Of a stretch of 64,000 nucleotides of DNA, positions 917 through 24,233 are shown piece after piece (position 1 is the stretch's first letter; every line of letters starts with the position of its first letter). The DNA lies in sequence record MZ443780.1, one strand, 5' to 3'. The notes beneath the pieces were generated by a model. That model had not been told where the DNA came from. It worked only from the letters and a program-made list of their open reading frames with translations, and made no database searches. Both the position numbers and the translations under genes were made by a program.

Positions 917-1576
917 TTACTTTTTCTGCGAAACACGCTTCCCGAGCTTGACGCCGATTTGAGTCATGATGCGTTTGACAGTCTCCCCGTCGTGTTCAGC
1001 CATTGCACTCGCTAAACGTTCGCCCTGTTCACGCGATAGCTCTGGCATAATCATTTTCAGCATCTGTGAGCGCATCTTAGCTGATTTAGAGCGTCCTTTC
1101 GAGACAGACACGCCTTCATTCACCTTGAGCGCATTGCTAATCGCTTTCTGCACACGACGATCACCGAAGATATCGCCGAATACGTCACCGAACAGGTCTT
1201 TGAACGATAGACCACCGCTCATAATGTCGTTTTTCGTGAAACGCACAGGCTGTCCGAGAGCGTTTGTCTTCGTGCAGTGCGTGGATTCAACTTCGTTCGT
1301 TGTGCGTCCACCAGCACGGAAGTTCTCGTCAGGACGTGACGCTTTGCCCTCTGCGCCTGGCTTCGTGTTGCCATTACGCAGATCTGCATCACCTTCAACA
1401 GCTTTATCCGGGTCGAACATGTCGTCCGCTTTTGCGCTTTGATTCGCATCAAACGGAATCTTACCTGTCAGCTTGTTTGGATCTGGCCAACTGTCCGGGA
1501 TATCAGACGCAGGTTGTGGTTTGTTCGTCATATCACCGTTAGCTTCGCTGCTCAAGCTGATCTTAATACGTGCCAT
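917..1576 (-). CDS. hypothetical, probable virion/internal head protein (N-terminal ISLS motif)
   Basis: 219 aa, AGGAG RBS, starts MARIKISLSS. Confidence 0.7.
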   Translation of the reverse strand: MARIKISLSSEANGDMTNKPQPASDIPDSWPDPNKLTGKIPFDANQSAKADDMFDPDKAVEGDADLRNGNTKPGAEGKASRPDENFRAGGRTTNEVESTHCTKTNALGQPVRFTKNDIMSGGLSFKDLFGDVFGDIFGDRRVQKAISNALKVNEGVSVSKGRSKSAKMRSQMLKMIMPELSREQGERLASAMAEHDGETVKRIMTQIGVKLGKRVSQKK

Positions 1577-1587
1577 TGTCTTTTCTC

Positions 1588-2697
1588 CTATCGGATCTTA
1601 AAGCCATTGAAAATGTTGTACGCAACTTCTTTGCGCTGTACGGGACGCGTGGTACACACCCATTCCCATTGTTCGTTTCGTGCTGTGCGCTTCTTAGGCG
1701 CTTCCATAACTTTCAGCACATAGTTTTTGAACGGCAGAACGAGAATGTCTTCTGGTTCTAACGGACCTGATCGAGCGGGCAGCACGACCGTGATGTTACC
1801 AACAGTCAGCTCCTGATCGTAGTTCAACACGTTCGCTTCTTCGCTGATGTTGCCCTTAACAGGAGGCACACCCAAATCGAAGACGAGCGTACAATGCGTG
1901 AATGCCTCAACGCCTTTCACGCGCAGCGTAACGTGTTTGCCGCGCCACGGTTCAAGGTTCGCTGCTGTTAGTTCGACTTCAACGCCGTTCAGCACAAGCA
2001 TAGGGCGTGGAAACGCAGGTAGCATTGATTCGTTCAGACGTACCGAATATGTCGCCTGAGTAAAGTATTTTGGGATAAGCTGATCGAAATCCACGTAACT
2101 GTCTTTGCGCTGCTGTCTGAAAGTTGCAGGGCTGGTGGATTGATCGAGCGTGTAGCCTGATGCGTTTTGAATGTGGTGGTGAGTCACAACGTTGTAGATG
2201 TAGCCTGTGCTAACAAACCCGGGCACAACGCCCTGACGATAGCAGATGCCGCAGTTCGCAACGTTACCACCATCCCACTTGACGTCGAACTCTTCGCCTG
2301 TGTCGATGCCCATCAGGTCGGCAGCGTCCATTGCAGCATTCATGCCGTCGTCGATATCATCGAGAGTAACCACTTGGCGTCCACCACCAAACATACCTTT
2401 CGAGACAGTGCCAATCTTAACTCCGCCGTCCATAGAACTGGATTCGCGTCCGAGTGATTTGAGCGCACCGTCTTGGTTATCGAAGATATCGTTTTCAACT
2501 TTGTTGCAGCTACAGGTGAGGCCCATCTTCGCCTTTTTAAAGATGACGATATCGGTGGCGTCCACCTCAAGGGCCTGTTCGACTTTCGACTTCACAACCT
2601 CTTGGATTGAGTTCAGGCGTTTCTGCACTCGCTCCGTTTCGTAGGTTTTGTGCCTGTCGTATTTATTTCGCTGTTTTCCGCGTTCGATCCAGCTCAT
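1588..2697 (-). CDS. probable neck/head-closure-like structural protein with Cys motifs
   Basis: 369 aa, GAGGAG RBS. CSC and CGIC motifs; the C-terminal beta-rich segment (ITVVLP...EDILVL...YVLKVME...WVCTTRPV) resembles head-closure folds. Function is inferred. Confidence 0.5.
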   Translation of the reverse strand: MSWIERGKQRNKYDRHKTYETERVQKRLNSIQEVVKSKVEQALEVDATDIVIFKKAKMGLTCSCNKVENDIFDNQDGALKSLGRESSSMDGGVKIGTVSKGMFGGGRQVVTLDDIDDGMNAAMDAADLMGIDTGEEFDVKWDGGNVANCGICYRQGVVPGFVSTGYIYNVVTHHHIQNASGYTLDQSTSPATFRQQRKDSYVDFDQLIPKYFTQATYSVRLNESMLPAFPRPMLVLNGVEVELTAANLEPWRGKHVTLRVKGVEAFTHCTLVFDLGVPPVKGNISEEANVLNYDQELTVGNITVVLPARSGPLEPEDILVLPFKNYVLKVMEAPKKRTARNEQWEWVCTTRPVQRKEVAYNIFNGFKIR

Positions 2698-2751
2698 AAT
2701 CTTCTCCTCTGTGTGGTTGAAATTAGTGACTAAAAATTTCTACCTTCGACC

Positions 2752-2760
2752 TAGTAAATA
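2752..2760 (+). promoter_or_regulatory. putative phage-sigma promoter motif TAGTAAATA (variant)
   Basis: 35 nt upstream of the resolvase ATG. Confidence 0.35.
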
Positions 2761-2795
2761 CTTATTTATACGCATGTCAAGACACGGAGCCTTTT

Positions 2796-3766: not shown

Positions 3767-4471
3767 ATGGCGAAGTTAAAGAAAGAACGATCAGTCAAGG
3801 TCAAAGCGAAAGTTAAGCCTGTTGTGAAAACAAAGGCGTCGACCAAGACGAAGAAAACAAAGAAGGAAAAAGCAATTCCTATTCGTGTTGTGGCAGACAC
3901 TCGTCCTATTATCACCTGTCCTGAGATGGAAGATAAGCCTCAACCATTTAAGTTCAAGGGGCAGTGTCCCATAACGACCTGTCAGTATTGCACACGCGAA
4001 ACACCGACCGGTTGTATGGCGCTTGACCGTAAAGAAGCTGCTGACCGTTCAATCTCTAACAAGGAGATCCAGTATTACAAACGTGGCCTCTTCCCGGAAC
4101 TTATGGAGATGGATCAAAAGCAGTTGGACAATACGATCCGCCGCGCACAAACTCGTGCCCGTACTGCTATCTGTCTTACTATGTTTATTGCCGGGATTGA
4201 TGATTCTGATTGCGATCGTTCTTTCCAGTACGTAGAAGGTCGGAGCAGAGCCGTCGATCAAGTACACAACTATCTTGTGCAGACGTTCAACGATTATCGT
4301 CCGTGGATGCTCGCGTATCTCGACGATGAGAAACGTTTCGCAGAGATGGTGGGTAAAATAACCAATTCCGAATTTAATTTAGGTGCAGCACTTCGTTTGA
4401 CGCCTCGTAAGTATCAGACGTTCTGCCTAGCGCTGCAAAACCTTAAACAATCTGGAGACTCCAATGAGTAA
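3767..4471 (+). CDS. hypothetical protein, Lys-rich N-tail and Cys cluster
   Basis: 234 aa; CPITTCQYC...GC motif. Confidence 0.75.
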   Translation: MAKLKKERSVKVKAKVKPVVKTKASTKTKKTKKEKAIPIRVVADTRPIITCPEMEDKPQPFKFKGQCPITTCQYCTRETPTGCMALDRKEAADRSISNKEIQYYKRGLFPELMEMDQKQLDNTIRRAQTRARTAICLTMFIAGIDDSDCDRSFQYVEGRSRAVDQVHNYLVQTFNDYRPWMLAYLDDEKRFAEMVGKITNSEFNLGAALRLTPRKYQTFCLALQNLKQSGDSNE

Positions 4472-6233
4472 CATTATTTCATTCGACCAGTTTCGCGCTA
4501 TGCTCAAGCGCAACATTCTGAAAGAACCTAAGATGCTGGTCAAGAACCAAACTCAGCCACTCGGTCAGATCATCTTCCAGTGCCCTGGTGACAACTTCAA
4601 AATGAAGGACATCACTATCCCTGCGTCACCGAATGCTATCGATCTGACGCTACAAGCTCCACTTGATAACCTGCTGGCGTGTGCTCAATTGAAATCTCTG
4701 TTCGACTTGCAGCGTATCGTTTTGCTGAACCCTGACGATATGCCAGTACCGGCAGAAGATATCGATCAGCCTGTTCTGTCTCAGCCACCAGTTGCTGGTG
4801 CGCTGTCTGTTGACGGTACAACTATCCCGAACGCTGTCGTGATCGTCGAACAAAACGGCAACGTCTGGACAGGCACTTCAAACAGTAGCGGTGTGTTCAA
4901 CGTGAACGTGTCCGGCCTTGAAGAAGGTCAGTTCTCGATCACTGTTACCGCAGAAGGTTATACGCCTGCACGTTACAACTTCACTGCTGGTGAGCAGCCG
5001 CTGCAACCTCTGCCTGAACCAACCGTACACGCAGTCTTCAAAGAGACAACCGTGTCGGGTACGACTGTGGCAAATGCTAATATTGTCGTGTCAGTGCAGA
5101 GCAAAGCGTACACCGGACAAGCTGATGATCAGGGTGCGTTCTCTATCAACGTTGACCCACTGCCGTTCGATACAATCTACGTGACTATCGAAGCGCCTGG
5201 GTATCTGTCCAAGCAGGTCACTGTTGTTACTGACAGCGTTCCTGGCCTTGCGCAGATTAACAGCGCACCTTTCCTGTCTACTTCTCTGGCAGGTAAAGCA
5301 AGCCCAAGCGCTCAGGTCGAGATTTTGATTGACGGACAAGCGAACCAGTTCGCTATCGCTGATGCAGACGGCAACTGGACTGCTGATGTCGGTGCTGTTA
5401 AAGGCGCTGTTACGATTCGTAGTCTGGAACAAGAAGGCTATGATGAAGCGACTGCGACAATGCAACCGACTAAGCTCCAGTTCGGTGCAATCACTGTCGA
5501 TGACGCTGACGCGTTTGGTGAGACACGCACTACCGTTACAGGTAACATTGCTGGTCTGAATCCAGAAGCGAACGATATCGCTGTTACCGTGACTGTTCAG
5601 GCTGGCGTGTACGAAGGTACTGTCAAACTCAGCAATGGCAACTTCACTATCACTGGTGTTGACGCTAAGGCGGGTGTTGGTGCGACTGGCGTTGTCAACG
5701 TCACCTCTGCGTTCTACGAAGATGGTGGCGCATCGTTTACCATTCTGGAAGAGTTCGCTGCGCCTACGCTGCAACAAGCACAGGATGGTCAGACTGCTGT
5801 AGTTGGTGACACTGTGGCAAGCACCACTGTTAAAGTCACCATGAACGGTGAAACCAAAACTGCGTCTTCAAACCCGCAGGGTGCGTTTAGCGTTGGTGGC
5901 TTCACTAACGTTGTTCCGGGCCCAGTCACTATCGAACTGTCTCGCGCTCAGTACCTGACTGCGAGCTTCGAAGTTACTCAGACCGTACAGGCTCGTGGTG
6001 AGCTTGATGCAGAGCTGAAATCTGGTGAAGACACCGTATCGGGATTAGCAACACCTGGCTCTACCGTATCTCTGACTCAGGACAGCATCACTGGTGATGC
6101 AGTAGCTGACGCGAGCACTGGTGAGTTCATTATCACGCTGTCCGGCCCTCTGGTTGAAGGTCAGGCTCAGCTTAAAGTTCAACATGCTGGTTATGTTGAC
6201 TATACTGAAACATTAGCTGTAGCGGCAGCTTAA
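4464..6233 (+). CDS. virion surface protein: N-terminal anchor domain plus about 6 tandem bacterial Ig-like repeats
   Basis: Six ~80-aa repeats (T.V.G.T...A.V.V...AD..G.F...I.V...GY); the N-terminal domain is paralogous to 6285..6941. Confidence 0.75.
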   Translation: MSNIISFDQFRAMLKRNILKEPKMLVKNQTQPLGQIIFQCPGDNFKMKDITIPASPNAIDLTLQAPLDNLLACAQLKSLFDLQRIVLLNPDDMPVPAEDIDQPVLSQPPVAGALSVDGTTIPNAVVIVEQNGNVWTGTSNSSGVFNVNVSGLEEGQFSITVTAEGYTPARYNFTAGEQPLQPLPEPTVHAVFKETTVSGTTVANANIVVSVQSKAYTGQADDQGAFSINVDPLPFDTIYVTIEAPGYLSKQVTVVTDSVPGLAQINSAPFLSTSLAGKASPSAQVEILIDGQANQFAIADADGNWTADVGAVKGAVTIRSLEQEGYDEATATMQPTKLQFGAITVDDADAFGETRTTVTGNIAGLNPEANDIAVTVTVQAGVYEGTVKLSNGNFTITGVDAKAGVGATGVVNVTSAFYEDGGASFTILEEFAAPTLQQAQDGQTAVVGDTVASTTVKVTMNGETKTASSNPQGAFSVGGFTNVVPGPVTIELSRAQYLTASFEVTQTVQARGELDAELKSGEDTVSGLATPGSTVSLTQDSITGDAVADASTGEFIITLSGPLVEGQAQLKVQHAGYVDYTETLAVAAA

Positions 6234-7169: not shown

Positions 7170-8225
7170 CTACTTCCTCTTTTCTATTGCTTTCGGTCTG
7201 TTCCACCCAAGTGCTTTCGCTGGCATGATACACTTCTTACCGTGTATGTCACGCAGCGTCATGCGAACTTCTTTGATCAACTTGAATGGTGCGTTGTCAG
7301 GGTCGAGCTTAATCAGCTTACCGTCTTCGTCAAATTCACGCGGTAACTTGAAGTGCTTAACAGGTACCGGAGAGTTACGCTCGAACTCCTCTTTGATTTT
7401 TCCACGCAGTAACTTACCGCCACCATCGTTGTCTGTCATCGTGTAGACTACGCTCACGCCCAGCATCTCAAGTGTTCTACGTTTCGTTTCACCGAACTGC
7501 TCTGCACCAAGCACTGCGAGTGCCGGTATGCCATACGACAATAACGCAAGCGCATCACGAGGACCTTCGACAAGCACAACGTATCTCAGCTTGTACTTTT
7601 TCAAACACTCTTTCACAAGCGGCAACGGGAATAGACCTTTATCTTTTGCCCAATCGCCTTGCGAGTTCACATAGCTGGTGCCGTTCATTTGCTTACGCAG
7701 ATAAGCAGCGATACCGCCTATGTATTTCGTACCATGCTTGCACGGGAAGAAGCAGACGTTCGTGCCTGTGTGCTGTGCATTAAGCAGACCACCAGCAGCA
7801 CGAACAAGCGCACCGGGATAACCGCGCCACTCAACATCTAGCGGCCACTCCATGTAAGACTTGCGCCCAAGAGCTTTCATCAATAGACCAACAGACGGGT
7901 AAGTACCTATCTTCTGTCCGATGTGCTCATACGTTTTAAGCAGAGCGCTCAAGCTGTTCGTGCCGGCGTCTTTCAGCGCCCAGCCTTTGATCTCTTGCAG
8001 CTTGGCATGTGCCGCTAATTTGTTCCAGCCACCCTTCTCACCACAACCAAAGCAGTGAAAGAACCCTAACGGGATTTCCATGCCTACAGAAGTGTAAATA
8101 CCACAACTAGGAGTCTTATCGCTGTGGAAGGGGCAGCACACCATCACGGTGTCGCCGTTGTATTTCTTCTCTCCCGGCAGTTTACCGATTTCCTCAAGAA
8201 TTATCTGATGAACGTCTTCTGCCAT
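7170..8225 (-). CDS. dnaG: DNA primase (CHC2 zinc finger plus TOPRIM)
   Basis: CCPFHSDKTPSC...FHCFGCG zinc finger; VVLVEGPRDAL and TDND TOPRIM motifs. Confidence 0.93.
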   Translation of the reverse strand: MAEDVHQIILEEIGKLPGEKKYNGDTVMVCCPFHSDKTPSCGIYTSVGMEIPLGFFHCFGCGEKGGWNKLAAHAKLQEIKGWALKDAGTNSLSALLKTYEHIGQKIGTYPSVGLLMKALGRKSYMEWPLDVEWRGYPGALVRAAGGLLNAQHTGTNVCFFPCKHGTKYIGGIAAYLRKQMNGTSYVNSQGDWAKDKGLFPLPLVKECLKKYKLRYVVLVEGPRDALALLSYGIPALAVLGAEQFGETKRRTLEMLGVSVVYTMTDNDGGGKLLRGKIKEEFERNSPVPVKHFKLPREFDEDGKLIKLDPDNAPFKLIKEVRMTLRDIHGKKCIMPAKALGWNRPKAIEKRK

Positions 8226-8264
8226 ACCATCCTCTATTCATTTCGTAATTTACGCATATAAGCA

Positions 8265-8273
8265 TATTTACAG
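8265..8273 (-). promoter_or_regulatory. putative phage-sigma promoter motif CTGTAAATA
   Basis: 39 nt upstream of the primase ATG on the minus strand. Confidence 0.5.
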
Positions 8274-8289
8274 ATAAGGGATAATAAGA

Positions 8290-8625
8290 ATGGGTAATCC
8301 ACATCGCTATGTACATTCCGCAGAGCGTCGTTTCTATGAACGGCACTGGTTACAGTTCTGCGATCTACTGAAAGTTGAACCTCAAACTCTCGGTGCTTTC
8401 AATAAGCAGGGCGATATGATTGGTCTTTATCTGCCTGTCGATTCAGACATTACGGAAATGACCAAGAGCATTAAGCTGATGTATTCCGTCACGGAAGATG
8501 ATGTTGAAGTGCGCTGTTACCTGTTCGGTACTCGCTACTACAAGTTCGTATTCTTTGAACAAACAATTGCAGTAAGCGAGGACGATGATGAGAACGTTCG
8601 CAAACGTACCAGCGCGAGTCAATGA
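8290..8625 (+). CDS. hypothetical protein
   Basis: 111 aa, AAGGGA RBS. Confidence 0.7.
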   Translation: MGNPHRYVHSAERRFYERHWLQFCDLLKVEPQTLGAFNKQGDMIGLYLPVDSDITEMTKSIKLMYSVTEDDVEVRCYLFGTRYYKFVFFEQTIAVSEDDDENVRKRTSASQ

Positions 8626-10088: not shown

Positions 10089-10592
10089 ATGGAAATTTAT
10101 GTAAGCCTGAGCCAGGACTCTACTGACAAGAATCGCAGTAAGGTATCAAGTCCTGAGTCTAACACTGGGCGCGTTGATGTGTCTGATTACGCTTCGCTTG
10201 AGAAGAAACTTCGCCTGACAGAAGAAGCGAAAGACAAAGAGAAGCTCGCTCAGAAAGCTGGTGGCGGGGATTCTGTAAAGGGTAAGAAAGGCGCTAAAAA
10301 AGATAGCGCGAAACCCAAAGGAGATGACTCTGACACGGACGCTGATAAAGAAGATGATGCCGGCGATGATGCCGACTTTAGCTTTGATGGAGGCGACGAT
10401 GATACAGATGAATCTACAGATGACTCTGGAGACGATTCCAATGGAAAGTCTAAAGCTAAGAAAGGTGGAAAAAAATCTGACAAGTCTGGAGATGCGGACG
10501 CAGAAGACGCAGAAGACGCTGACGCAGACGAATCCGAAGGTGATGACGGGGATGCAGATGCTGAAAGCACTGATGATGAGGACGTCGAGTAA
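10089..10592 (+). CDS. low-complexity D/K-rich protein with N-terminal VSLS motif
   Basis: GAGGTG RBS before ATG 10089 (MEIYVSLSQ); alternating Lys and Asp blocks. Confidence 0.75.
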   Translation: MEIYVSLSQDSTDKNRSKVSSPESNTGRVDVSDYASLEKKLRLTEEAKDKEKLAQKAGGGDSVKGKKGAKKDSAKPKGDDSDTDADKEDDAGDDADFSFDGGDDDTDESTDDSGDDSNGKSKAKKGGKKSDKSGDADAEDAEDADADESEGDDGDADAESTDDEDVE

Positions 10593-14368: not shown

Positions 14369-14698
14369 ATGGAAATGTTAGTTAGTCTCTCGCACGAAAT
14401 CCGTGTCGATGGTCAAGATAGTGCTGATGCCAAAGCTATTGCGCTCGCACCTACTGACGGTGAACAACGTGCGCTTGAACTGCAAGAGCAACAACGCATT
14501 GCAGAAGAATATGGCGTAGACACACCCAAAGAGGAAATCGCCGAGAAAGAAGAAGATCGCAAAAAGCGCGAAGAAGAAGAGGCTAATGACAAGCGCACTA
14601 AGCCACCAGCAGATTTAGGTCAGCGCAAGCCTATCGACGATAAAGACCTTACAGCAACCGATATCCAAAATCAGCATGATAACCTGACAAAGATCTAG
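14369..14698 (+). CDS. acidic protein with N-terminal VSLS motif
   Basis: GGAG RBS before ATG 14369 (MEMLVSLSH). Confidence 0.75.
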   Translation: MEMLVSLSHEIRVDGQDSADAKAIALAPTDGEQRALELQEQQRIAEEYGVDTPKEEIAEKEEDRKKREEEEANDKRTKPPADLGQRKPIDDKDLTATDIQNQHDNLTKI

Positions 14699-15781: not shown

Positions 15782-15783
15782 AA

Positions 15784-15792: not shown

Positions 15793-15829
15793 TTGCTCAC
15801 AAGGCAAAACTCAATATTGAGGAATAACA

Positions 15830-17110
15830 ATGGCACGTGGATTTGGTGACATTCAAGATAACAGCAAACGCGATAGTTTGCGCGAGTCGGAAATCTTTGA
15901 AATCTTCCCTCTTTCGAAGAAAGCAAACGGCAACTGGGTATCAATCCGTCTGCTGAATCTTGACCTGCTTCCAATTAAGAAGCACTGGATCAAGATCATG
16001 GGCGGCAAGGATAAAGATAAAGAAATCAAAATCCCGCGCATGTGCGTTAGCTTCGACCCGGACAATCAGAACAAACCTCTGAACGGTATGAAGTGTCCGT
16101 ACTGTGGCATCGCTCACGGTAACGACGAATCTGGTGCGCCAGCGCAGTATGACTATAAGTGGTATGCGCAAGCGATCATCCGTGACGAGCAAGCTGCTGC
16201 GCCGCGTAAAATGCCTAAGCTCACTAAACAAGAGCAGAAAACCGGCAAGAAAGAAATGGGCAGTGAGTCTTGGACTCCTGTTATGTGTATTCCGCTGTCG
16301 AACTCTCTGGCTGGCAAAATCCGCGAACTCGGTGAACGTAACATTCACACGGTCAAAGATAAGAAGTCCGGCAAGAAGTCGAAGCAGGCGTTCCAGGTCA
16401 ATCACGATAAGTACGGTTGTGATATCGAAATCAAATACAACCCGAAAAAATCACCGGCAGAGCGCTACACTATTGAGCGTGGCGATCACACGCCTCTGAC
16501 CGAAGAAGAAAAAGGTTATCTGACCTGGGACTTCGACAACTGGAACGAAATCTACGACATGCTCGGTCGTCTGAACGAAGAAGCTGCTATGGCTGACTTC
16601 AAGAAGATGGACGTTATCGGCGTTAACACCAACGATGATGATGGTGATGACGATGAAGACGATGACGACGACATGGCGCTTGGCCGCAAGAAGAAAGGCG
16701 GCAAGGCAGACAAGAAAAAACGTCGCAGCGATGATGACGACGACGATGAGGACGAAGATGACGACGATGACGACGATGAAGATGATCGTCCGTCTAAGAA
16801 GTCCAAGAAGTCGAAACCAACCAAGTCTCGTAAGATGTTAGACGATGACGAGGATGATGACGACGACGATGAAGACGATGAAGATGATCGTCCGTCGAAG
16901 AAAAAGAAATCTTTGAAGGACAAAAAGTCCTCGAAGAAATCGTCTAAGAAGTCTAAGTCCTCAGATGACGATGACGACGAAGACGATGATGCACCTAAGA
17001 AGAAGAAAAAGAAATCTTCTGACAAGGTGAAATCGTCTGATAAGAAGAAAAAGAAAAAGTCTTCTGACGACGATGATGATAAGCCGAAGAAAAAGAAAAA
17101 GAAAAAGTAA
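15830..17110 (+). CDS. gp32-like single-stranded DNA-binding protein with long D/K block tail
   Basis: HW...C...CPYC zinc site, WYAQAIIRD and G.DIEIKY motifs; sits directly upstream of RecA/UvsX. Confidence 0.75.
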   Translation: MARGFGDIQDNSKRDSLRESEIFEIFPLSKKANGNWVSIRLLNLDLLPIKKHWIKIMGGKDKDKEIKIPRMCVSFDPDNQNKPLNGMKCPYCGIAHGNDESGAPAQYDYKWYAQAIIRDEQAAAPRKMPKLTKQEQKTGKKEMGSESWTPVMCIPLSNSLAGKIRELGERNIHTVKDKKSGKKSKQAFQVNHDKYGCDIEIKYNPKKSPAERYTIERGDHTPLTEEEKGYLTWDFDNWNEIYDMLGRLNEEAAMADFKKMDVIGVNTNDDDGDDDEDDDDDMALGRKKKGGKADKKKRRSDDDDDDEDEDDDDDDDEDDRPSKKSKKSKPTKSRKMLDDDEDDDDDDEDDEDDRPSKKKKSLKDKKSSKKSSKKSKSSDDDDDEDDDAPKKKKKKSSDKVKSSDKKKKKKSSDDDDDKPKKKKKKK

Positions 17111-17120
17111 TTCGCAACAC

Positions 17121-17147
17121 GGGGTAGCTTAGGCTGCCCCTTCTTTT
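17121..17147 (+). terminator. intrinsic terminator
   Basis: GGGGTAGC-TTAG-GCTGCCCC followed by TTCTTTT. Confidence 0.7.
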
Positions 17148-17168
17148 CTCAATCTGGACTATCCCACA

Positions 17169-19700
17169 ATGGCGAAAACGAACAACAAGGCCGAGAAAAA
17201 GGCAGAGAAGAAAGCTAAAGTCAAAGCCAAGAAAAGTGGCGCATCGGCTGTAGCTTCTGACGATATCGGCGGCGTAGAGGTCATGGGCTTTGACCTTGCG
17301 AGTTTGATGGACGATGTGCTTGACGGCATCGAAAAGAAAACGAAAGTAAGCTCTCAGGATGCAGCACGTCACGCACCTCGTATTTCTACTGGTTGCCTTG
17401 CGCTTGACATGTACCTGTCTGGTGGTATTGTACCGGGCGGTTGGTATACGTTCAGCGGCGGTGAGCAGTCGTGCAAGTCAACAATGACCATGAGTATCAT
17501 GGCGAGCCTGATTCGTCTGCATTACTCTGGCATTAGTGTAGTGTTCGACTACGAAGGTTCAACCGATGCAGAGTACGTTGCTGGTCAGTTGAAGACGTTC
17601 GGCGTTAAAGTTGATCCGAAGACAATCTTCGGTGTGCGTGACGACGAAGACGGTAGTTGGATCGTTAAGCCTAAGATCCGTTACTATGCACCAGACAACG
17701 GTGAGCGCTTCTTCGATTATATGTCGATGCTGCGTCGTCGTCTGCCTGACAAGATCGTTGAGAAAGACGGCTCTGCGTACTACATCTTTGAGAACAACAA
17801 AGAGAACGCGAAGAAGCTGGCTGGCAAGTACGACAAGAAATGGTTCAGTCGTAACAACCAGTTCAAAGTCGCTGCGCCTGACGGTCACATGCAAGCGATG
17901 GTTATCGTTGACTCTTATCCGGCAATGCTGCCTGATCAGGTCGATGATGATGACGGTTCGAAAGCAATGGCGCTGCAAGCGCGTATGTTCTCTGACGGCA
18001 TCAAACGTTTCCGTGGCGGTATGCGTCGTAAGATGATGACCATCGTTGGCGTTAACCAGTTGCGTCAGAAACCTGCTGTAATGTTCGGCAGCCCTGAGTA
18101 TGAGCCCGGTGGCGATGCGTTGAAGTTCTACTGCTTCGACCGTGATACTCAGATTCGTACTAATCACGGTGTGCTGACTGCACCTCAGATCAAAGAGCTG
18201 TTGGACAACGGCACTGAGGTGAGCGTTGAGTCGTTCGATGGCTACCAGAAGATCAATGGTGCGTGGAAAGTTGAAGACGCTCCGTTCCCAATCGAACTGA
18301 ACGCTGGTGGACACGCATACGTTGGTAGCGCTGAACACCGCCAGTTTACTTTCATGTTCGACACAACTGCTGATGGTATGGCCGTGCTGCGTCCTGAGTG
18401 GAATACGCTCAACCAGCTTGCTCAGTACCCAGAGCAGAAAGGTCAGTATGCAGCACTGCGCGTACCGCCTGTGAAAGAACTGAAAGAGAACGTGCCTGAT
18501 GCGTTTGATGAAGCAAGCCAGCTCGTTAGTAACCTGCTTGGTAATGCTGACTTCGAAAGCGTACAACTGCCTCTGGCATCTTTCGGTGATACCACGTTCG
18601 CAGCGAACGTACTGACCACCAATATGATTGGCGATCAGGACGATGTTCACACGTTCTCTTTGTGGGCACGTCACCTGCTGTCTATCGGTATCTACGCGTA
18701 TGCTGACGAAAGCGGTCTGCACATTCCGGGTCTGAACAAACATGAACTGGAAGCGGCTGTAGCGCAAGACGAACTCGGTGCGTTTGCTGGTATCAGCTTC
18801 GAAGCCACCAGCCGTCAACGTCAAACGCAGATGCTGTCTGTTATCGCTGACGTGTTCCCTGAACTGACTCGCTACGTTCTGGACTATCAGTTGCAGACCG
18901 GTCAGGATAAAATCTATCTGGGCCCAGAGCAAGACTTTGCTCAGGCACTCGATCTGATTCTGCACAAACAGATTGAAGGTTACGATGACCTGTACGATCT
19001 GCTGATGCAGCAACTGGCCTACGTTGAAGACTGGTACAACTTCGACAACTCAATCGTTCCTGTTCCGTTCACGCTGAAAGCTATCGTGAATCCGACTGAG
19101 TTCTGGGATGTGAACGTTGCCGAAACGTCTGTTGTGATCACTAACGGCTTCGTCAGTCACAACTCTGATGTGCGTGTGCGTCTGGCCTCTCGTGCTGTTC
19201 CTGAAGGTTGGCCGAAACTCAAAGACGCTCCAGGCATCGTTGGTGAGAAGTCTGTTACTGTCGAAGGCGGCACTGACCGCTATCGTTTCATTGCTGCTAA
19301 GACCATCAAGAACAAGATGGGTGGCATCCCTAACCAGAGCACTTGGCTGCGCTTGTGGGAAGCTGACGGCAACGGTGAAGCGCGCGGCTTTGACCCAGTG
19401 TTTGATACGTGGCACTATCTGAAAACTCTCGGCCTGATTAACGGTACTCGTAAGAGCTTCAAGATCAAAGCGCCTTGCCCGCTCGCATCTGATGTTAAGA
19501 TGGACTGGGATGACTTCCGTACTCTCATCAACGGCAGCAAGACTCAGGTTGTCGATGTGTGTAAGAAACTGAAAGTCAAACCTGCTGGCTTGCGTCTGTG
19601 GTGCTTCAAGTTCGTGCAGTCCACCAAGGGCAACGAGATGTTGAAGAACGCTATCAGTAAGTCGGCGAAGTCTTCTAACGACGATGACGACGACGAGTAA
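17169..19700 (+). CDS. recA: RecA/UvsX-like recombinase containing an intein (about 499 aa after splicing)
   Basis: ISTGCLALDMYLSGG, Walker A variant GGEQSCKST, VIVDS, ARMFS, NQLRQK, EPGGDALKFY/SDVRVRL, KNKMG motifs. Confidence 0.92.
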   Translation: MAKTNNKAEKKAEKKAKVKAKKSGASAVASDDIGGVEVMGFDLASLMDDVLDGIEKKTKVSSQDAARHAPRISTGCLALDMYLSGGIVPGGWYTFSGGEQSCKSTMTMSIMASLIRLHYSGISVVFDYEGSTDAEYVAGQLKTFGVKVDPKTIFGVRDDEDGSWIVKPKIRYYAPDNGERFFDYMSMLRRRLPDKIVEKDGSAYYIFENNKENAKKLAGKYDKKWFSRNNQFKVAAPDGHMQAMVIVDSYPAMLPDQVDDDDGSKAMALQARMFSDGIKRFRGGMRRKMMTIVGVNQLRQKPAVMFGSPEYEPGGDALKFYCFDRDTQIRTNHGVLTAPQIKELLDNGTEVSVESFDGYQKINGAWKVEDAPFPIELNAGGHAYVGSAEHRQFTFMFDTTADGMAVLRPEWNTLNQLAQYPEQKGQYAALRVPPVKELKENVPDAFDEASQLVSNLLGNADFESVQLPLASFGDTTFAANVLTTNMIGDQDDVHTFSLWARHLLSIGIYAYADESGLHIPGLNKHELEAAVAQDELGAFAGISFEATSRQRQTQMLSVIADVFPELTRYVLDYQLQTGQDKIYLGPEQDFAQALDLILHKQIEGYDDLYDLLMQQLAYVEDWYNFDNSIVPVPFTLKAIVNPTEFWDVNVAETSVVITNGFVSHNSDVRVRLASRAVPEGWPKLKDAPGIVGEKSVTVEGGTDRYRFIAAKTIKNKMGGIPNQSTWLRLWEADGNGEARGFDPVFDTWHYLKTLGLINGTRKSFKIKAPCPLASDVKMDWDDFRTLINGSKTQVVDVCKKLKVKPAGLRLWCFKFVQSTKGNEMLKNAISKSAKSSNDDDDDE
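18132..19163 (+). mobile_element. class 1 intein, 344 aa, in RecA (degenerate or absent homing endonuclease)
   Basis: Starts CFDRDT, block B SAEH, block F FWDVNV, ends SHN with +1 Ser. Removing it restores ALKFY-SDVR. Confidence 0.9.
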
Positions 19701-19707
19701 CACACGC

Positions 19708-19734
19708 GGGAGGGCTTCGGCTCTCCCATCTTTT
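19708..19734 (+). terminator. intrinsic terminator
   Basis: GGGAGGGC-TTCG-GCTCTCCC followed by ATCTTTT. Confidence 0.7.
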
Positions 19735-19750
19735 GTTTGAGGAGAATGTA

Positions 19751-20179
19751 ATGCGCACTCAAATCTTTACCGCTGATATCCTTAATCTGGAAACAGTGAC
19801 TGTCAACGAAGAAGACGGTAGTGAAGTTCGTACACCCACTATCGTGCCTAACGTTGAAGGCGAACCTGAGTTTAACATCTACACCATTCAGTCTCTGATT
19901 CAGTCAACAACTACCGGCGAGCCTGTGTCTGACACGCGCCTGATTGTGTTGATCACACCTGACCTGCTGGCGGGCTTCTCTACTAACGGTTTGGAAAACT
20001 ACTTCGACCCTATTGCTCGCGTCGAAGATATCGCTGCTGGTAACGTCGGTAGCGTCCTCGGCAAACAGGTTGTTATCAACGATAAGTCTGTTGCGCCGTG
20101 TCTTGCAGTAGCAAACGTTAGCGATGTTGAAGAGGGTGTAACTATCCTCGCATACAGCGCAGCGCAGGTAAAACTGTAA
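19751..20179 (+). CDS. hypothetical protein
   Basis: GAGGAG RBS before ATG 19751, 142 aa. Confidence 0.75.
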   Translation: MRTQIFTADILNLETVTVNEEDGSEVRTPTIVPNVEGEPEFNIYTIQSLIQSTTTGEPVSDTRLIVLITPDLLAGFSTNGLENYFDPIARVEDIAAGNVGSVLGKQVVINDKSVAPCLAVANVSDVEEGVTILAYSAAQVKL

Positions 20180-20233
20180 ATACTGATCAACAACCGAACA
20201 CAAATGCTGTGTGTAGTCTCGCCCGTCTTGGGC

Positions 20234-20266
20234 ATGGGAGAGCCGGATGGCCTCCCATTTTTTTTT
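20234..20266 (+). terminator. strong intrinsic terminator
   Basis: ATGGGAG...CTCCCAT stem followed by T9. Confidence 0.85.
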
Positions 20267-20282
20267 ATTCTGAGGAATTTTT

Positions 20283-21356
20283 ATGAGCCAGCATAAAACT
20301 GAATTGTGGGATGAAGCTCTAGGCGGTGCACTGTCTGCTAAATACAATCAAACGGCTGAGTACGTCCCCGTGATTCGTAGCGTCAATGCACGACTCGTCG
20401 AGGAGATTGCTCCATTCCGTAGACGGCTTGTTGCGGGGTTTGAAAAGTTCCTGACTGACGCTAAAGGTAAGATTGAATACTTCGGTCCTTCACTCGAACA
20501 GTTCGCGTTATGGCTACAGCCGAACGGTAACTTCCAAAAGTCTGACTATGATATTGCTGTATTGTCTCATACGCATACCCATTTCTTTTGGCAGTATACC
20601 CGAGCAGAGTTTGAGTTCGAAGAAGAAGTGATGGAGCATATCATCGAATCAGAAACACCTACCAAGATACCAGCGTCAATCATCAAGCAACTTCCTTACT
20701 GGACTCAATGGGTACGCGCACCTATAGGCGTTGATATCACAGGGGAACCTGCTGCATCTCAAGGCGCTAACCTGCACTTCTTTGGCGCTCTTGTGAGTTA
20801 TTTGCGCTACGACAATAAAACGTTTCTGAATCTAAACGCGCCTGTGTTTACTGAGCGTGGGGATTGGAAAGACCCAGCGCTTATGGCTGCTAACGTTCGC
20901 GTGTGCATTGATGATGACATTGACTTCACCGACCCGAATACAATCATTCCTTATATGCAGGGTACGCATGAAAATTTGAGTGAGGAAATGAAACAAAAGA
21001 TATTCGGTGCTGTGCGTGAATGGGCGCCGAAGATGATCAGTTGTGTGTTATTCTTGTGCTCCCAGCAAGAAGCAGTATACAAACAGGGTGCAGTGCAGCA
21101 AGCAGTTCGCCGTAAAGGCAACAACTATAAAATGCAAGCGCTGTCCAAATCGAAACAGTTTACGGTCGGCGGTGAGTTCGTTGACCAAATACGTGAGTAC
21201 GAAGCTGACGCTATGCGCTCTGCATCAGGGCAGCGCCGTGCTCATATCAGACGTGGGCACTATCACCACTTCTGGACAGGGCCAAAAACAGGTGAGCGTA
21301 AACTCATTTGCAAATGGCTTCCACCGAGCATTGTTCGCGGTACTGCCGCAGAGTAA
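20283..21356 (+). CDS. AcrVA2/FinQ-family protein
   Basis: W..T...F.F.EE...P..IP.SI...LP.W, LFLC and RAHIRRGHYHHFWTG...KWLPP align with Moraxella AcrVA2 motifs recalled from memory (LPDWC, LWLC, RPHIRRGHWHGYWQG...RWQP). Confidence 0.75.
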   Translation: MSQHKTELWDEALGGALSAKYNQTAEYVPVIRSVNARLVEEIAPFRRRLVAGFEKFLTDAKGKIEYFGPSLEQFALWLQPNGNFQKSDYDIAVLSHTHTHFFWQYTRAEFEFEEEVMEHIIESETPTKIPASIIKQLPYWTQWVRAPIGVDITGEPAASQGANLHFFGALVSYLRYDNKTFLNLNAPVFTERGDWKDPALMAANVRVCIDDDIDFTDPNTIIPYMQGTHENLSEEMKQKIFGAVREWAPKMISCVLFLCSQQEAVYKQGAVQQAVRRKGNNYKMQALSKSKQFTVGGEFVDQIREYEADAMRSASGQRRAHIRRGHYHHFWTGPKTGERKLICKWLPPSIVRGTAAE

Positions 21357-21404
21357 TAGCTCTTTTCTAAACTCCACGTATGGGCGTTATGCCCGGAGGT
21401 TAAT

Positions 21405-22163
21405 ATGTCCCGTGTACAAACTCTATGGATTCCAGATATGGAATCGTATGAACCTTATGTCCGTTCTCTGTGCCATATGGCGCGAGCGCTGGAAAACAAT
21501 GGCCTGAACTATGGTAAGTTGAAACGCGTAGTTGTTATCGGCCTGTCGAAACGCAGTGTTGAGTCTTACGTTAAACAACTGCTTAACTCTAACACTCTGC
21601 CTAACACTCTCGTCTGTTTCGGTATCGACGAAGCGCCTGACAGCCACAAAGAATTTTCGTTCATCGGCTCGCATGTTGTGTTGATGCACGACCTGACGTA
21701 TGCCGGTGACAATGCGATGCACCGTGTGTCTCAACGTGTTCTCGAAATAATCCTGAGCTTGAAGCCTAAGCCACAAGACACTGAGCTTAAAAATGGTGCG
21801 CTGTCTCTCGTATACCAGAATCCTATGCTCTGGTCATTCATACGTGACACTGGCTCAAGTATGTACGGACACAGCCGTCACATTCAATACGCAGAAGGGA
21901 TCGCATCGACTGTCGGCGTAGATCAACTAATGTCCTGCGAGAACAACGAGGACTTCCATAAGCTCCATGCGCAGACAATCACAATCGGCCAAGAGTTCTT
22001 CTACGTTAAGACCTCAGAACTGCTGTCAAGGTTAGGCAGTCTTAGTTGGTCGCTCGGCTGCATAAACAGTGAGTTCAGAGCCGACTATAAAATCGTGCTG
22101 CATGAGGATCTGCGCATACCAATCTTCGAAGAATTTCTGTTAGGTGACTTCGGGGGCTTTTAA
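21405..22163 (+). CDS. hypothetical protein
   Basis: 252 aa, GGAGG RBS. Confidence 0.75.
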   Translation: MSRVQTLWIPDMESYEPYVRSLCHMARALENNGLNYGKLKRVVVIGLSKRSVESYVKQLLNSNTLPNTLVCFGIDEAPDSHKEFSFIGSHVVLMHDLTYAGDNAMHRVSQRVLEIILSLKPKPQDTELKNGALSLVYQNPMLWSFIRDTGSSMYGHSRHIQYAEGIASTVGVDQLMSCENNEDFHKLHAQTITIGQEFFYVKTSELLSRLGSLSWSLGCINSEFRADYKIVLHEDLRIPIFEEFLLGDFGGF

Positions 22164-22236
22164 GAATATTCTTAGCCTGCTCTCTAATTTCTATATGTTG
22201 GCAAGTAGTGCTGACGTATCGTTATTGGAGAATAAC

Positions 22237-22497
22237 ATGTGCGAACGTAGCCATCTGCGGTTGAAGTACCTCGCACGGTCATCGAACTGGTGCAATAATA
22301 AAGTAAACGCTTGTAGTGAGCGGAAGGCGAGAGATGTTCAGTGCGAAGAATTTTTGGCTGCGACCAAAGATTGTCGTTCGATTCAGAACTCGTCCAGTGT
22401 TGTTTCTTTCTTCTCTGGCCAAGAGCTTGTTGGTCAGGCTATCTGGCGTGAGATAGAGGGAGACAACATGCTTCAATTCCGGTTGCTACTTGCTTAA
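22237..22497 (+). CDS. hypothetical protein
   Basis: GGAG RBS before ATG 22237, 86 aa. Confidence 0.5.
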   Translation: MCERSHLRLKYLARSSNWCNNKVNACSERKARDVQCEEFLAATKDCRSIQNSSSVVSFFSGQELVGQAIWREIEGDNMLQFRLLLA

Positions 22498-22501
22498 CGA
22501 C

Positions 22502-22540
22502 AAAAGGGCTTTCAGAGAAAATCTGATGGCCCTTTTCTTA
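22502..22540 (+). terminator. probable terminator
   Basis: AAAAGGGC...GCCCTTTT stem. Confidence 0.65.
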
Positions 22541-22592
22541 TTCTATTGCTAATTTTCATCGACAAACACACTAACCGAATCTGAGGTAATTT

Positions 22593-24233
22593 ATGTCTTT
22601 GATTTCACTTAAAGGCGTAGCGTCCACATCTGCCCCTACCAAAGCGCAGAAAGATGCTGCTGTCTATATGTTTGGCTCTAAGGGCCATTCAATCGTTGCT
22701 GTGCTCGACAAATTCAGTCGTGCGAAAGAGCTACGCACCGCACACGTTGACGGTATGCTCAAGATGATGAAAGAAGGTGAAGATGACGAGATCATCAAGT
22801 TCACCGAGTCTGCTGCGGGTCGTAAGGCAATCGCTGCTGCTAAAGCATTCGCCGTAGCTAAAACGCTGACCGCCAGTATCAAAGCGCTGAAACTGATTCG
22901 CGTTCCTGTTAAGTGGGTAGCTGGTCATTCAGACGCGGCTGCTGCGCGTATCACCGAGACAAAAGAGATTCGTGCTCGCAAGTCTGCTGCTGGTAAAGCA
23001 GAGAAGCCGATCAAGCTCGACAACCCGGGCGCACCTGAGTCTACCACAGTAGACAACAAAGTGATTGACGCGAAGAAAGGTTCTGCAACACCGGCAACCG
23101 ATGACGTAAGCGTGATTGACCGTGTAGTCAAAAACCCTTCTATCAAAAACACGTCTATCATTATCCGCCGCCTCTTTAAAGGCCATGAGACTACATCTTC
23201 ATTGATGTTCCGCAAGGGTGTCGGTACTCAATCGACGCTTCTGGGTCTTGGGTCTCACGGCAACGGACACGAGACTGGTGCCGGACTGCTGGTGGCTGCA
23301 TTCAAAGCTACCGGCATCAAACCTAAGTGGTACTTAGCTGATGCTGGCGATGCTGCTTTCGATTTAGGTTCTGCTGCAAACGTAACGAAAGTGTTCAAGT
23401 GGTTGTCTGCGAGAAAGCCGGGCGAAACTTTTGCTGCCACTGCGAAGCTGCCTAAATCTGGTAAAGTACCTGCAGGTGCAACGCGTGTTGTGCGCGATCA
23501 TATCGGCAAGCCTGAGCCTGTGTCGAAAGAAAAACTCGCTTCTTCGACGTTTGATTTTGTAGGCGTTAAGTCTGCTGCTGGTGGCGCACTTAAACTGCAA
23601 TTCAAACAACCGAAGAATGACAACGAATGGTCACTGACAATCCGTCGTGATAAAGACTCTATTACGAGTGACCACGATGGTTCTTCTGGCTACCAGACTG
23701 CTGAGTCTTTCCTGCAACGCGGTATTACTGCAATCGGCGGTTCTGTTGTCGCAGAGCACCAGCAGCCGGGCAGCGCGATCTTCCAGTTTGCGAGCGAAGA
23801 TCAGGCTAAAGCATATATTGCTTGGCTTAAAAAGCAGAAAGCTCAAACCATCAACTACAAAACTGAGCCTAAGATCACGGTAACCAAAGCTGCTTCATAC
23901 ACACCGTCAGGTAAAACTGATGTTTCGCTGGTGGATGAAATGGCAGAAGTACCTGCACGTAAGATCGCAGCCAAACCTTTGCAGGCGCGTGAAGAATATT
24001 TCAATGCTCTGCGCAACATCCTGCAAAACAATCTGCCTAAGTCAGAAGTGTCCGCAACATCTAACGGTGTTGTCGTAGCGAAAGGCACCAAGATGTACAC
24101 GATTCGCCTCGACGATAAATCGTGGACAATTCAGACTGGCGTTACTGGCAAGACAAAACGTATCGGCGCAACGTTCGATATCGTTGATCTGCTCGGCATG
24201 ATCGACAAGTCAATTCTGAGTCCCAAAGCGTAA
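22593..24233 (+). CDS. basic Ala/Lys-rich protein, probable internal virion protein
   Basis: 546 aa, GAGGT RBS, starts MSLISLKGVASTSA. Confidence 0.7.
   Translation: MSLISLKGVASTSAPTKAQKDAAVYMFGSKGHSIVAVLDKFSRAKELRTAHVDGMLKMMKEGEDDEIIKFTESAAGRKAIAAAKAFAVAKTLTASIKALKLIRVPVKWVAGHSDAAAARITETKEIRARKSAAGKAEKPIKLDNPGAPESTTVDNKVIDAKKGSATPATDDVSVIDRVVKNPSIKNTSIIIRRLFKGHETTSSLMFRKGVGTQSTLLGLGSHGNGHETGAGLLVAAFKATGIKPKWYLADAGDAAFDLGSAANVTKVFKWLSARKPGETFAATAKLPKSGKVPAGATRVVRDHIGKPEPVSKEKLASSTFDFVGVKSAAGGALKLQFKQPKNDNEWSLTIRRDKDSITSDHDGSSGYQTAESFLQRGITAIGGSVVAEHQQPGSAIFQFASEDQAKAYIAWLKKQKAQTINYKTEPKITVTKAASYTPSGKTDVSLVDEMAEVPARKIAAKPLQAREEYFNALRNILQNNLPKSEVSATSNGVVVAKGTKMYTIRLDDKSWTIQTGVTGKTKRIGATFDIVDLLGMIDKSILSPKA

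What the first reader, a model, noticed from the sequence alone, without database searches (positions are those of the whole stretch)
917..24233. Shared N-terminal [IV]SLS tag on unrelated proteins: a candidate capsid-targeting or maturation signal
Seen: MARIKISLSS (917..1576, minus strand), MEIYVSLSQ (10089), MEMLVSLSH (14369) and the variant MSLISLKGVASTSA (22593). The proteins are otherwise dissimilar, charged and low-complexity. Known: T4 internal proteins carry a short N-terminal capsid-targeting sequence that the prohead protease removes. Inference: this phage group may use its own ISLS-type address to load proteins into heads for co-injection.
Basis: partly seen in the sequence, partly recalled or inferred. 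Interest (0 to 1): 0.65.

Follow-up and report, generated by a model that had tools for sequence, protein, structure and literature searches.

The report
Shared head-loading leader on phage proteins
A giant Erwinia phage starts at least eight unrelated proteins with the same eight-residue leader. It is most likely an address label that loads them into the phage head, as phage T4 does with a different label, but no virion data yet show this.

Summary
The window is Erwinia jumbo phage pEa_SNUABM_40 (Alexandravirus).

- **The signal.** [IV]SLS occurs 14 times in the 341-protein proteome, and 9 of these sit at residue 5 or 6 (0.03 expected, P about 3e-16).
- **The class.** Eight proteins share M-[EQKM]-[IVLM]-x-[VI]-S-L-S. 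The protein at 917-1576 carries a version one residue longer.
- **The fourth case.** The protein at 22593 is not a member here, although its Yoloswag and JA29 orthologs still carry the tag.
- **Selection.** The copies use different codons and the proteins are otherwise unrelated. The tag persists in orthologs across four genera.

The head-loading reading has four indirect supports:
- Tagged genes lie among replication genes but mostly follow the promoter-like motif found before structural operons.
- The tag's core, [AS]-L-S, recurs in the acidic scaffold-like protein between the protease and coat genes, and in the coat protein's N-terminus.
- The head protease has the T4 gp21 fold (Z 11.2).
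- The giant helicase, which carries a loose tag variant, is a virion protein in the relative PaBG.

There is no direct virion evidence, and the cut site is unresolved. The scan had already noted this tag on other Erwinia phage DNA (s1-156521, s1-156755).

The parts
917..1576 (-). CDS pEaSNUABM40_00224 (219 aa, pI 9.4). Carries the tag one residue longer than canonical (ISLS at residues 6-9).
   Evidence: PSSM 10.5 bits. Orthologs keep ISLS or ISLN in AD1, Alexandra and Y3. PHROG 31583, function unknown.
1550..1576 (-). Codons 1-9 of that CDS, the tag itself.
   Evidence: Serine is AGC and leucine is TTG here; other copies use other codons.
1588..2697 (-). CDS 00225 (369 aa, unknown). It lies upstream in the same transcription unit and ends 11 nt before the tagged gene.
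   Evidence: No Pfam match.
2720..2726 (-). Promoter-like motif M2 (CTAATTT), 29 nt before the start of CDS 00225. It would drive the 00225-00224 unit.
   Evidence: The same motif precedes the structural operons.
8245..8252 (+). Weaker M2-like site (GTAATTTA), 45 nt before CDS 00233. It may drive the unit that holds the tagged genes at 10089 and 14369. Assignment is uncertain.
   Evidence: It overlaps the divergent M1-type site of the primase gene, so it may be fortuitous.
10089..10592 (+). CDS 00236 (167 aa, pI 4.1, 33% Asp+Glu). Canonical tag at residues 1-8.
   Evidence: PSSM 23.1. Tag kept in AD1, Alexandra, Y3, Yoloswag and JA29, at 32% overall identity in JA29.
10089..10112 (+). Tag codons 1-8 of CDS 00236.
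14369..14698 (+). CDS 00245 (109 aa, pI 4.6). Canonical tag at residues 1-8. The ATG at 14369, not the upstream GTG at 14327, is the conserved start.
   Evidence: PSSM 23.0. A Shine-Dalgarno-like CTGGAG lies upstream. Orthologs are listed.
14369..14392 (+). Tag codons 1-8 of CDS 00245.
22593..24233 (+). CDS 00253 (546 aa, pI 9.8). Its N-terminus is a decayed relative of the tag and is not a class member in this genome.
   Evidence: PSSM 0.2. The Yoloswag and JA29 orthologs carry M-S-[IT]-I-S-L-S. AD1, Alexandra and Y3 do not.
22549..22555 (+). Promoter-like motif M2 (CTAATTT), 44 nt before CDS 00253.

Best explanation
**What it is.** The eight-residue leader M-[EQKM]-[IVLM]-x-[VI]-S-[LF]-S is a capsid-targeting address of the Alexandravirus, Sasquatchvirus, Yoloswagvirus and Salmondvirus jumbo phages.

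**Proposed mechanism.**
1. Proteins that carry the leader are made late, together with the structural proteins.
2. The leader docks them into the assembling prohead core.
3. The same [AS]-L-S core marks the acidic scaffold-like protein gp144, gp141 and the coat-protein propeptide.
4. The gp21-fold prohead protease gp146 then trims the leader, either right after the second serine or at a glutamate a few residues downstream.
5. The cargo stays in the head and is probably ejected with the DNA. It includes a Nudix hydrolase, several small basic proteins, two acidic proteins and perhaps the 1948-aa SNF2 helicase.

**Shown here:**
- the tag class and the selection acting on it;
- its link to a promoter motif and to head-module proteins;
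- the fold of the protease.

**Inferred, not shown:** packaging, cleavage and ejection.
For: 1. **Architecture like the T4 CTS.** The leader is fixed at Met1 on proteins that share nothing else. The T4 CTS is described in PMC9026906.
2. **Selection at the protein level.**
   - Serine is encoded by both TCN and AGY, and leucine by TTG, CTC, CTG and CTT.
   - In Yoloswag and JA29 orthologs, residues 5-8 are 80% identical against 37% for residues 9-28.
   - There are 7-9 tagged ORFs in each of six genomes of four genera.
3. **Expression signal.**
   - CTAATTT occurs 21 times in the genome. 16 of these lie in intergenic DNA, 11-76 nt before a start codon and in its orientation.
   - These sites precede the baseplate, tail-tube, coat, sheath and head-tail-joining operons.
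   - They also precede the tagged units gp192, gp211-210-209, gp225-224, gp124-123, gp200-196 and gp253.
   - Neighbouring replication genes carry a different motif, CTGTAAA.
4. **Motif core in the head module.**
   - Across 56,479 aligned residues, only 9 [SA][LF]S sites are conserved in all four genera. Five are in gp144 and one is in gp141.
   - gp144 has 7 [AS]LS sites. No composition shuffle out of 2000 reached that number.
   - The coat protein has L-A-L-S at residues 30-33 in 6 of 7 genomes.
5. **Protease.** gp146 has the T4 gp21 fold: AF2 pLDDT 88, Foldseek probability 1.0, VIA Z 11.2 with rmsd 2.8 over 148 aa. Herpesvirus assemblins come next. His124 and Ser181 are invariant in 102 family members.
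6. **Virion evidence from a relative.** The PaBG ortholog of gp181 is band 1 of the PaBG virion proteome. The listed mass is 221,162 Da and I compute 221,159 Da (PMC7412058). P1 packages its 250-kDa DarB through an N-terminal signal (PMC9024508).
Against: - No virion proteome exists for any phage that carries the canonical tag.
- The helicase tag variant scores only 0.2 bits, and PaBG itself has no canonical tags. The one experimental link is therefore loose.
- Tagged genes sit in replication and recombination neighbourhoods.
- For the two acidic in-window members (10089, 14369), the late-type promoter assignment rests on a weak site and a 12-gene read-through.
- That M2 is a late promoter is inferred only from the genes it precedes. 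It also precedes genes of unknown role (gp5-27).
- T4-type proteases studied so far cut after Glu (PMC5694885). The tag has no fixed Glu, so the cut site is unknown and the leader may not be removed at all.
Confidence: 0.6

Rival explanations
1. The tag directs proteins into a virion or assembly compartment other than the DNA-filled head interior, or acts only as a shared docking and cleavage site for the morphogenetic protease. The other compartment could be the tail, the baseplate or the 'hairs' of these hairy myoviruses. In the protease-only case, the cut would activate or inactivate late proteins without packaging them.
For: The evidence that ties the tag to late and structural expression and to the head-module motif does not say where the cargo ends up. 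The motif could simply be what the protease recognises.
Against: The conserved internal motif sites concentrate in proteins encoded between the protease and coat genes, not in tail proteins. The T4 and P1 precedents are both head-targeting.
Confidence: 0.17
2. The tag is an N-terminal short linear motif that binds a replication hub, in particular the phage's own beta-type sliding clamp gp174. From my own knowledge, E/Q-[ILVM]-x-[VI]-S-L resembles the bacterial clamp-binding hexapeptide QLxLxL, which is N-terminal in Hda.
For: The phage encodes a clamp (gp174; phmmer 2e-28 to the PaBG clamp, which matches TIGR00663) and a clamp loader (gp212, DNA_pol3_delta2 6.5e-26). Tagged genes lie among replication and recombination genes. 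gp209-211 adjoin the clamp loader gene, and one cargo is a MutT-like Nudix hydrolase.
Against: - No recognisable replisome enzyme carries the motif; polymerase, ligase, primase, helicase and clamp loader all lack it.
- The motif is locked to Met1, which clamp-binding motifs are not.
- Tagged units use the structural-type promoter, whereas the clamp loader, primase, ligase and SSB genes use the other one.
- The motif core recurs in head-module proteins.
- PaBG keeps the clamp but not the tags.
Confidence: 0.08
3. The tag is an N-terminal degron or stability signal read by a host or phage protease other than the prohead protease. It would set the lifetime of a group of late proteins.
For: A fixed N-terminal position is typical of N-terminal degradation signals (my own knowledge). 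The proteins are functionally diverse.
Against: It does not explain the recurrence of the core motif inside the scaffold-like protein and the coat N-terminus. It also does not explain co-regulation with structural genes. I know of no degron with this consensus.
Confidence: 0.07
4. The shared start is a nucleic-acid or translation-level feature, or an N-terminal cassette spread by recombination that has no function as a peptide. The feature could be a translation initiation region or a recombination site.
For: The first three codons (ATG GAA ATY) are similar in most copies.
Against: - Codons 5-8 differ freely at synonymous positions, and even between the two serine codon families.
- The flanking DNA does not align.
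- The peptide is kept in orthologs of 30-50% identity across genera.
Confidence: 0.03

Closest known systems
Phage T4 capsid targeting sequence (CTS) of IPI, IPII, IPIII, Alt and gp24 (PMC9026906)
   Same: - A short N-terminal leader starts at Met1 on otherwise unrelated, mostly small basic proteins.
- The genes are scattered outside the head module.
- A gp21-fold prohead protease is encoded in the head module.
- The cargo includes enzymes.
   Different: - The sequence is unrelated. The conserved part here is 8 residues ending Ser-Leu-Ser, with no fixed Glu. The T4 leader is 10-19 residues and is cut after Glu.
- The same core motif recurs in a scaffold-like protein and in the coat N-terminus.
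- Packaging and cleavage are untested here.
Phage P1 DarB N-terminal packaging signal (PMC9024508)
   Same: An N-terminal signal within 30 residues loads a giant (250 kDa) helicase-type protein into the head. Here a 1948-aa SNF2-type helicase has a tag-like N-terminus, and its PaBG ortholog is a virion protein.
   Different: P1 Dar proteins share no consensus N-terminus. Here 8-10 proteins share one. I did not test homology between gp181 and DarB.
Propeptides of phiKZ, 201phi2-1 and SPN3US head and ejection proteins (PMC5694885, PMC10052503)
   Same: In these jumbo phages, many head-internal proteins are processed by a gp21-related protease at a short motif.
   Different: Those propeptides are mostly long (about 20 to over 120 residues) and not shared between proteins. 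They are cut at [AGS]-x-Glu.
Encapsulin cargo-loading peptides (my own knowledge, not tested here)
   Same: A short shared peptide with a small-Leu core addresses unrelated enzymes to the interior of an HK97-fold shell.
   Different: Most are C-terminal and bind the shell protein directly. No protease is involved, and there is no evidence here for shell binding.
Bacterial beta-clamp-binding motif QL[SD]LF / QLxLxL (my own knowledge)
   Same: The pattern of polar and hydrophobic residues is similar. An N-terminal example is known (Hda).
   Different: The tag here is locked to Met1, is absent from replisome enzymes and is co-regulated with structural genes.

Membership tests
T4-type capsid targeting sequence | Short leader starting at Met1, shared by otherwise unrelated proteins | tested here: met
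   8 proteins at 21.5-24.9 bits plus one at 10.5; next N-terminus 6.3. No similarity beyond residue 10.
T4-type capsid targeting sequence | Bearers are found inside proheads and virions | not testable with these tools
   There is no virion proteome for a tag-bearing phage. The only indirect evidence is that the PaBG ortholog of gp181 is a virion band.
T4-type capsid targeting sequence | Leader ends in the protease motif (L/I-x-Glu) and is removed | tested here: not met
   Residues 6-8 are Ser-Leu-Ser and there is no fixed Glu. Glu follows at variable distances of 10-23 residues in most members. Removal itself is not testable here.
T4-type capsid targeting sequence | A gp21-type prohead protease is encoded by the phage | tested here: met
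   gp146: VIA Z 11.2 and Foldseek probability 1.0 to 5JBL. Invariant His124 and Ser181.
T4-type capsid targeting sequence | The leader suffices to package a foreign protein | not testable with these tools
   This needs a fusion experiment.
T4 gp21 / herpesvirus assemblin-fold prohead protease (for gp146) | Fold, and His-then-Ser catalytic pair about 50-57 residues apart | tested here: met
   AF2 pLDDT 88.3. 5jbl_A Z 11.2, VZV protease 6.3, HCMV protease 5.3. His124 and Ser181 are invariant in 102 sequences. No Pfam or PDB sequence match.
T4 gp21 / herpesvirus assemblin-fold prohead protease (for gp146) | Cleavage specificity (Glu at P1 in T4, phiKZ and SPN3US) | not testable with these tools
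   Two candidate site types are seen, [AS]-L-S and x-S-Glu. Neither can be assigned.
Bacterial clamp-binding motif | Present on replisome and repair enzymes that work with the clamp | tested here: not met
   No polymerase, ligase, primase, helicase or clamp loader scores with the tag matrix.
Bacterial clamp-binding motif | Binds the hydrophobic pocket of the clamp | not tested

The most novel reading that the evidence does not exclude
This clade uses a complete, sequence-defined cargo code. One [AS]-L-S-centred peptide serves as address and processing mark for the scaffold-like core, the coat propeptide and an 'ejectome' of about ten proteins, among them a Nudix hydrolase and a 220-kDa SNF2 helicase. 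The gp21-fold protease cuts after Ser rather than Glu, which would be a new specificity for T4-type prohead proteases. The tag could be used to load foreign proteins into a 260-kb jumbo-phage head.
Probability: 0.25. Interest if true: 0.75.

Novelty: new variant of a known kind. Interest (0 to 1): 0.62.

Why it matters
- **A cargo list from sequence alone.** Capsid-targeting leaders are established by experiment in T4 and P1 only. A second clear consensus leader, in an unrelated jumbo-phage clade, would give a sequence-readable list of proteins the phage carries into the cell. Such proteins are likely host-takeover or anti-defence factors. Here the list is a Nudix hydrolase and about eight proteins of unknown function.
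- **A practical handle.** The leader could be used to pack chosen proteins into large phage heads.
- **Protease specificity.** It gives a concrete test of whether gp21-fold proteases can have non-Glu specificity.
- **Annotation.** The tag also fixes the true start codons of these genes, for example the ATG at 14369 rather than the upstream GTG.

Tried and rejected
- **DNA-level explanation.** Aligning the four gene starts shows no shared DNA, and the codons differ. Rejected.
- **Protease model from 12 close relatives.** AF2 gave pLDDT 45 and the model was unusable. It was replaced by a 102-sequence alignment.
- **Sequence searches with the protease.** Pfam and PDB sequence searches, as a single sequence and as profiles, found nothing.
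- **Clamp search.** TIGR00663 found no clamp in pEa40 at the first look. phmmer with the PaBG clamp found gp174.
- **Conserved-motif scan that required PaBG to match.** It missed the gp144 sites and was redone on the four tag-bearing genera.
- **De novo search for another shared leader in PaBG.** None was found.
- **ESM Atlas.** Nothing usable for the proteins at 917 and 22593.
- **Public sequencing runs.** Only metagenome and metatranscriptome contigs hold the region. They cannot show timing or RNA ends.
- **Complex prediction (protease with residues 1-40 of the 10089 protein).** No verdict either way.
- It was redone from the files.
- **Literature.** Searches found no virion proteome and no description of the tag for Alexandravirus, Y3, Yoloswag or the Dickeya phages.


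Full report
**Identity of the window.** Megablast places window 8000-24500 at 100% identity on Erwinia phage pEa_SNUABM_40 (MZ443780.1, 267,121 bp, Alexandravirus). The window is record 186001-250000. I rebuilt the whole genome from the record and translated its 341 annotated CDS. The phage belongs to the clade of 'hairy' jumbo myoviruses that includes Dickeya AD1 and JA29, Erwinia Alexandra, Y3 and Yoloswag, and more distantly Pseudomonas PaBG and Lu11 (PMC7412058; PMC6143709).

**The observation.**
- In the whole proteome, [IV]SLS occurs 14 times and 9 of these start at residue 5 or 6. The expected number there is 0.028, and the binomial P is 3e-16.
- No tripeptide in shuffled N-termini reached more than 5 proteins at one fixed offset, against 8 observed.
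- A position matrix separates a discrete class. Eight proteins score 21.5-24.9 bits, the 917-1576 protein scores 10.5 (its tag is one residue longer), the next N-terminus 6.3 and the best internal site 12.9.
- The consensus is M-[EQKM]-[IVLM]-x-[VI]-S-[LF]-S, most often followed by Ala.
- Three members lie in the window (917, 10089, 14369). Six lie elsewhere: gp123 (Nudix hydrolase, Pfam 2.8e-13), gp192, gp196, gp198, gp210 and gp211.
- gp209 has a slightly decayed copy, and its Yoloswag homolog carries a proper tag.
- The 22593 protein scores 0.2 bits and is not a member here. Its Yoloswag and JA29 orthologs start with a near-canonical tag, so it looks like a decayed member.
- With the first ten residues removed, the proteins show no pairwise similarity; the best E-value is 0.17.

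**Selection acts on the peptide.**
- The copies use different codons. Serine is encoded by both TCN and AGY, leucine by four codons and valine by four. The flanking DNA does not align.
- Each of six genomes from four genera has 7-9 ORFs of at least 60 codons that begin with the tag. PaBG has none.
- Orthologs keep the tag at 30-50% overall identity. In Yoloswag and JA29, residues 5-8 are 80% identical against 37% for residues 9-28.
- Homologs of the 917 protein occur in 58 phage records: 48 Erwinia, 8 Dickeya, 1 Yersinia and phage NCTB.

**Expression context.** Two promoter-like motifs stand out in the intergenic DNA.
- M1 (CTGTAAA, often extended to CTGTAAATA) precedes the ligase, SbcD-like, clamp-loader, primase, sigma-factor and SSB genes.
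- M2 (CTAATTT, usually preceded by G or C) occurs 21 times in the genome. 16 of these are intergenic and lie 11-76 nt before a start codon in its orientation.
- M2 sites precede the operons that hold the baseplate wedge, tail tube, coat protein, sheath and head-tail-joining genes.
- M2 also precedes gp192, gp211 (followed by gp210 and gp209), gp225-gp224, gp124-gp123, gp200 through gp196, and gp253.
- The site is conserved before the gp211 ortholog in Y3 and the gp192 ortholog in Yoloswag.
- By nearest upstream site, 11 of 12 tagged or tag-like genes fall under M2, against 43% of all genes.
- These units are few. For the two acidic in-window members, the assignment rests on a weaker site (window 8245-8252) and a long read-through.
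- That M2 is a late promoter is my inference from the genes it precedes.

**Link to the head module.**
- The coat protein gp142 (365 aa) has a conserved stretch at residues 28-41 that contains L-A-L-S in six of seven genomes. The Alexandraviruses also have G-L-S-Glu at residues 72-75.
- The PaBG coat protein loses about 20% of its mass on maturation (PMC7412058), which would fit a cut near residue 74.
- Across 177 proteins (56,479 residues) with orthologs in Y3, Yoloswag and JA29, only nine [SA][LF]S tripeptides are conserved in all. Five are in gp144 and one is in gp141. The others are in gp137, the gp210 tag and the primase.
- gp144 is a 679-aa, extremely acidic protein encoded between the protease and coat genes in the M2-driven coat operon.
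- gp144 carries seven [AS]LS sites, the highest density in the proteome (Poisson P 1.8e-5). None of 2000 composition shuffles reached seven.
- I did not find the motif as a conserved feature of the protease itself.

**The protease.** gp146 (PHROG 18299, 'head maturation protease') has no Pfam or PDB sequence match.
- A profile search of 1.84 billion representative proteins found 1264 relatives.
- In an alignment of 102 of them, N89, H124, G134, S181 and G183 are invariant.
- With that alignment AF2 gave pLDDT 88.3.
- Foldseek ranks T4 gp21 (5JBL) first, with probability 1.0.
- An aligner that does not rely on Foldseek gives Z 11.2 (rmsd 2.8 over 148 of 165 residues) to 5jbl_A. The varicella-zoster (Z 6.3) and cytomegalovirus (Z 5.3) proteases follow.
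- The phage therefore has a T4-type prohead serine protease.
- T4, phiKZ and SPN3US enzymes cut after Glu, whereas herpesvirus assemblins cut after Ala (my own knowledge). Specificity here cannot be read off the fold.
- Two site types are compatible with the data. One is directly after [AS]-L-S. The other is after a Glu 10-23 residues from the start; several members have x-S-Glu at residues 11-15. I cannot decide between them.

**Virion evidence from a relative.** The 1948-aa SNF2-type helicase gp181 starts with a loose variant of the tag, I-S-T-S-A at residues 6-10. Its PaBG ortholog, PaBG_00202, is band 1 of the PaBG structural proteome. The listed mass is 221,162 Da and I compute 221,159 Da. 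That protein has S-L-S-A at residues 9-12. This shows that the family is packaged in one relative, but the tag variant is weak. P1 packages its 250-kDa DarB through an N-terminal signal (PMC9024508).

**Rivals.**
- *Clamp-binding motif.* This was worth considering. The phage has its own clamp (gp174) and clamp loader (gp212), and the tag resembles QLxLxL. Against it: no replisome enzyme carries the tag, the tag is locked to Met1, the tagged units use the structural-type promoter, and the core motif recurs in head proteins.
- *Degron, RNA-level signal or non-head virion address.* These fit fewer observations.

**Earlier scan notes.** Two earlier AI notes on other Erwinia phage pieces reached the same reading. 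I re-derived the statistics independently.
- I confirmed the claim about scaffold-like proteins, and in part the claim about the coat propeptide.
- I did not confirm the motif on the protease.
- I added the promoter association, the protease fold and the PaBG link.

**Verdict.** The tag is real and strongly selected. It is most likely (about 0.6) a T4-like capsid-targeting leader with a new sequence. Packaging, removal and ejection remain to be shown.

Noticed in passing
whole genome; in the window at 2720-2726 (-), 22549-22555 (+) and 22184-22190 (+): There are two distinct promoter-like motifs. CTGTAAA(TA) precedes replication genes. (G/C)CTAATTT lies 29-55 nt before the starts of structural operons and of the tagged genes. 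This suggests a middle/late switch, perhaps through the phage sigma factor gene at window 14744-15781.
   Followed up: partly
record MZ443780.1 110912-112054 (-), outside the window: gp145 lies between the gp21-fold protease and the acidic gp144. It has a KMPT-N domain (Pfam 1.5e-26) followed by an HExxH zinc-metallopeptidase motif, so it is a possible second peptidase in the head module.
   Followed up: partly
record 108794-110833 (-), outside the window: gp144 is labelled 'ATPase' by PHROG 20988. It looks instead like a scaffold or core protein, with two CxxC pairs at the N-terminus, a region of about 200 aa of Asp/Glu with repeated F-D-S-E-S units, and a conserved C-terminal part.
   Followed up: partly
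record 150021-155867 (-), outside the window: This 1948-aa SNF2-family helicase has a PaBG ortholog that is an abundant virion protein. It may be a packaged, DarB-like anti-restriction or takeover enzyme. I did not test homology to DarB.
   Followed up: partly
window 14318-14368 and record 177568-177697: A G+C-rich hairpin with a T run, followed by TTCTGGAG, lies directly before two tagged genes (14369 and gp210). Similar hairpins precede tagged genes in Y3, Yoloswag and JA29. These may be terminators with read-through, or a regulatory element.
   Followed up: no
record 169623-170228 (-), residues about 100-110 of gp198: An internal tag-like site, [FV]-[IM]-S-x-S-[AS]-P-P-P, is conserved across genera inside a protein that is itself tagged. 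It is the best internal match to the tag matrix (12.9 bits).
   Followed up: partly
window 14327-14368: The Alexandra RefSeq record starts the ortholog of the 14369 gene 12 codons upstream. Tag conservation and the Shine-Dalgarno site favour the ATG at 14369, so the tag can be used to correct start codons.
   Followed up: partly
window 4464-6233 (+): This 589-aa protein is annotated in AD1 and Y3 as containing an inverse-autotransporter beta-barrel domain, which is unusual for a phage replication-region gene.
   Followed up: no
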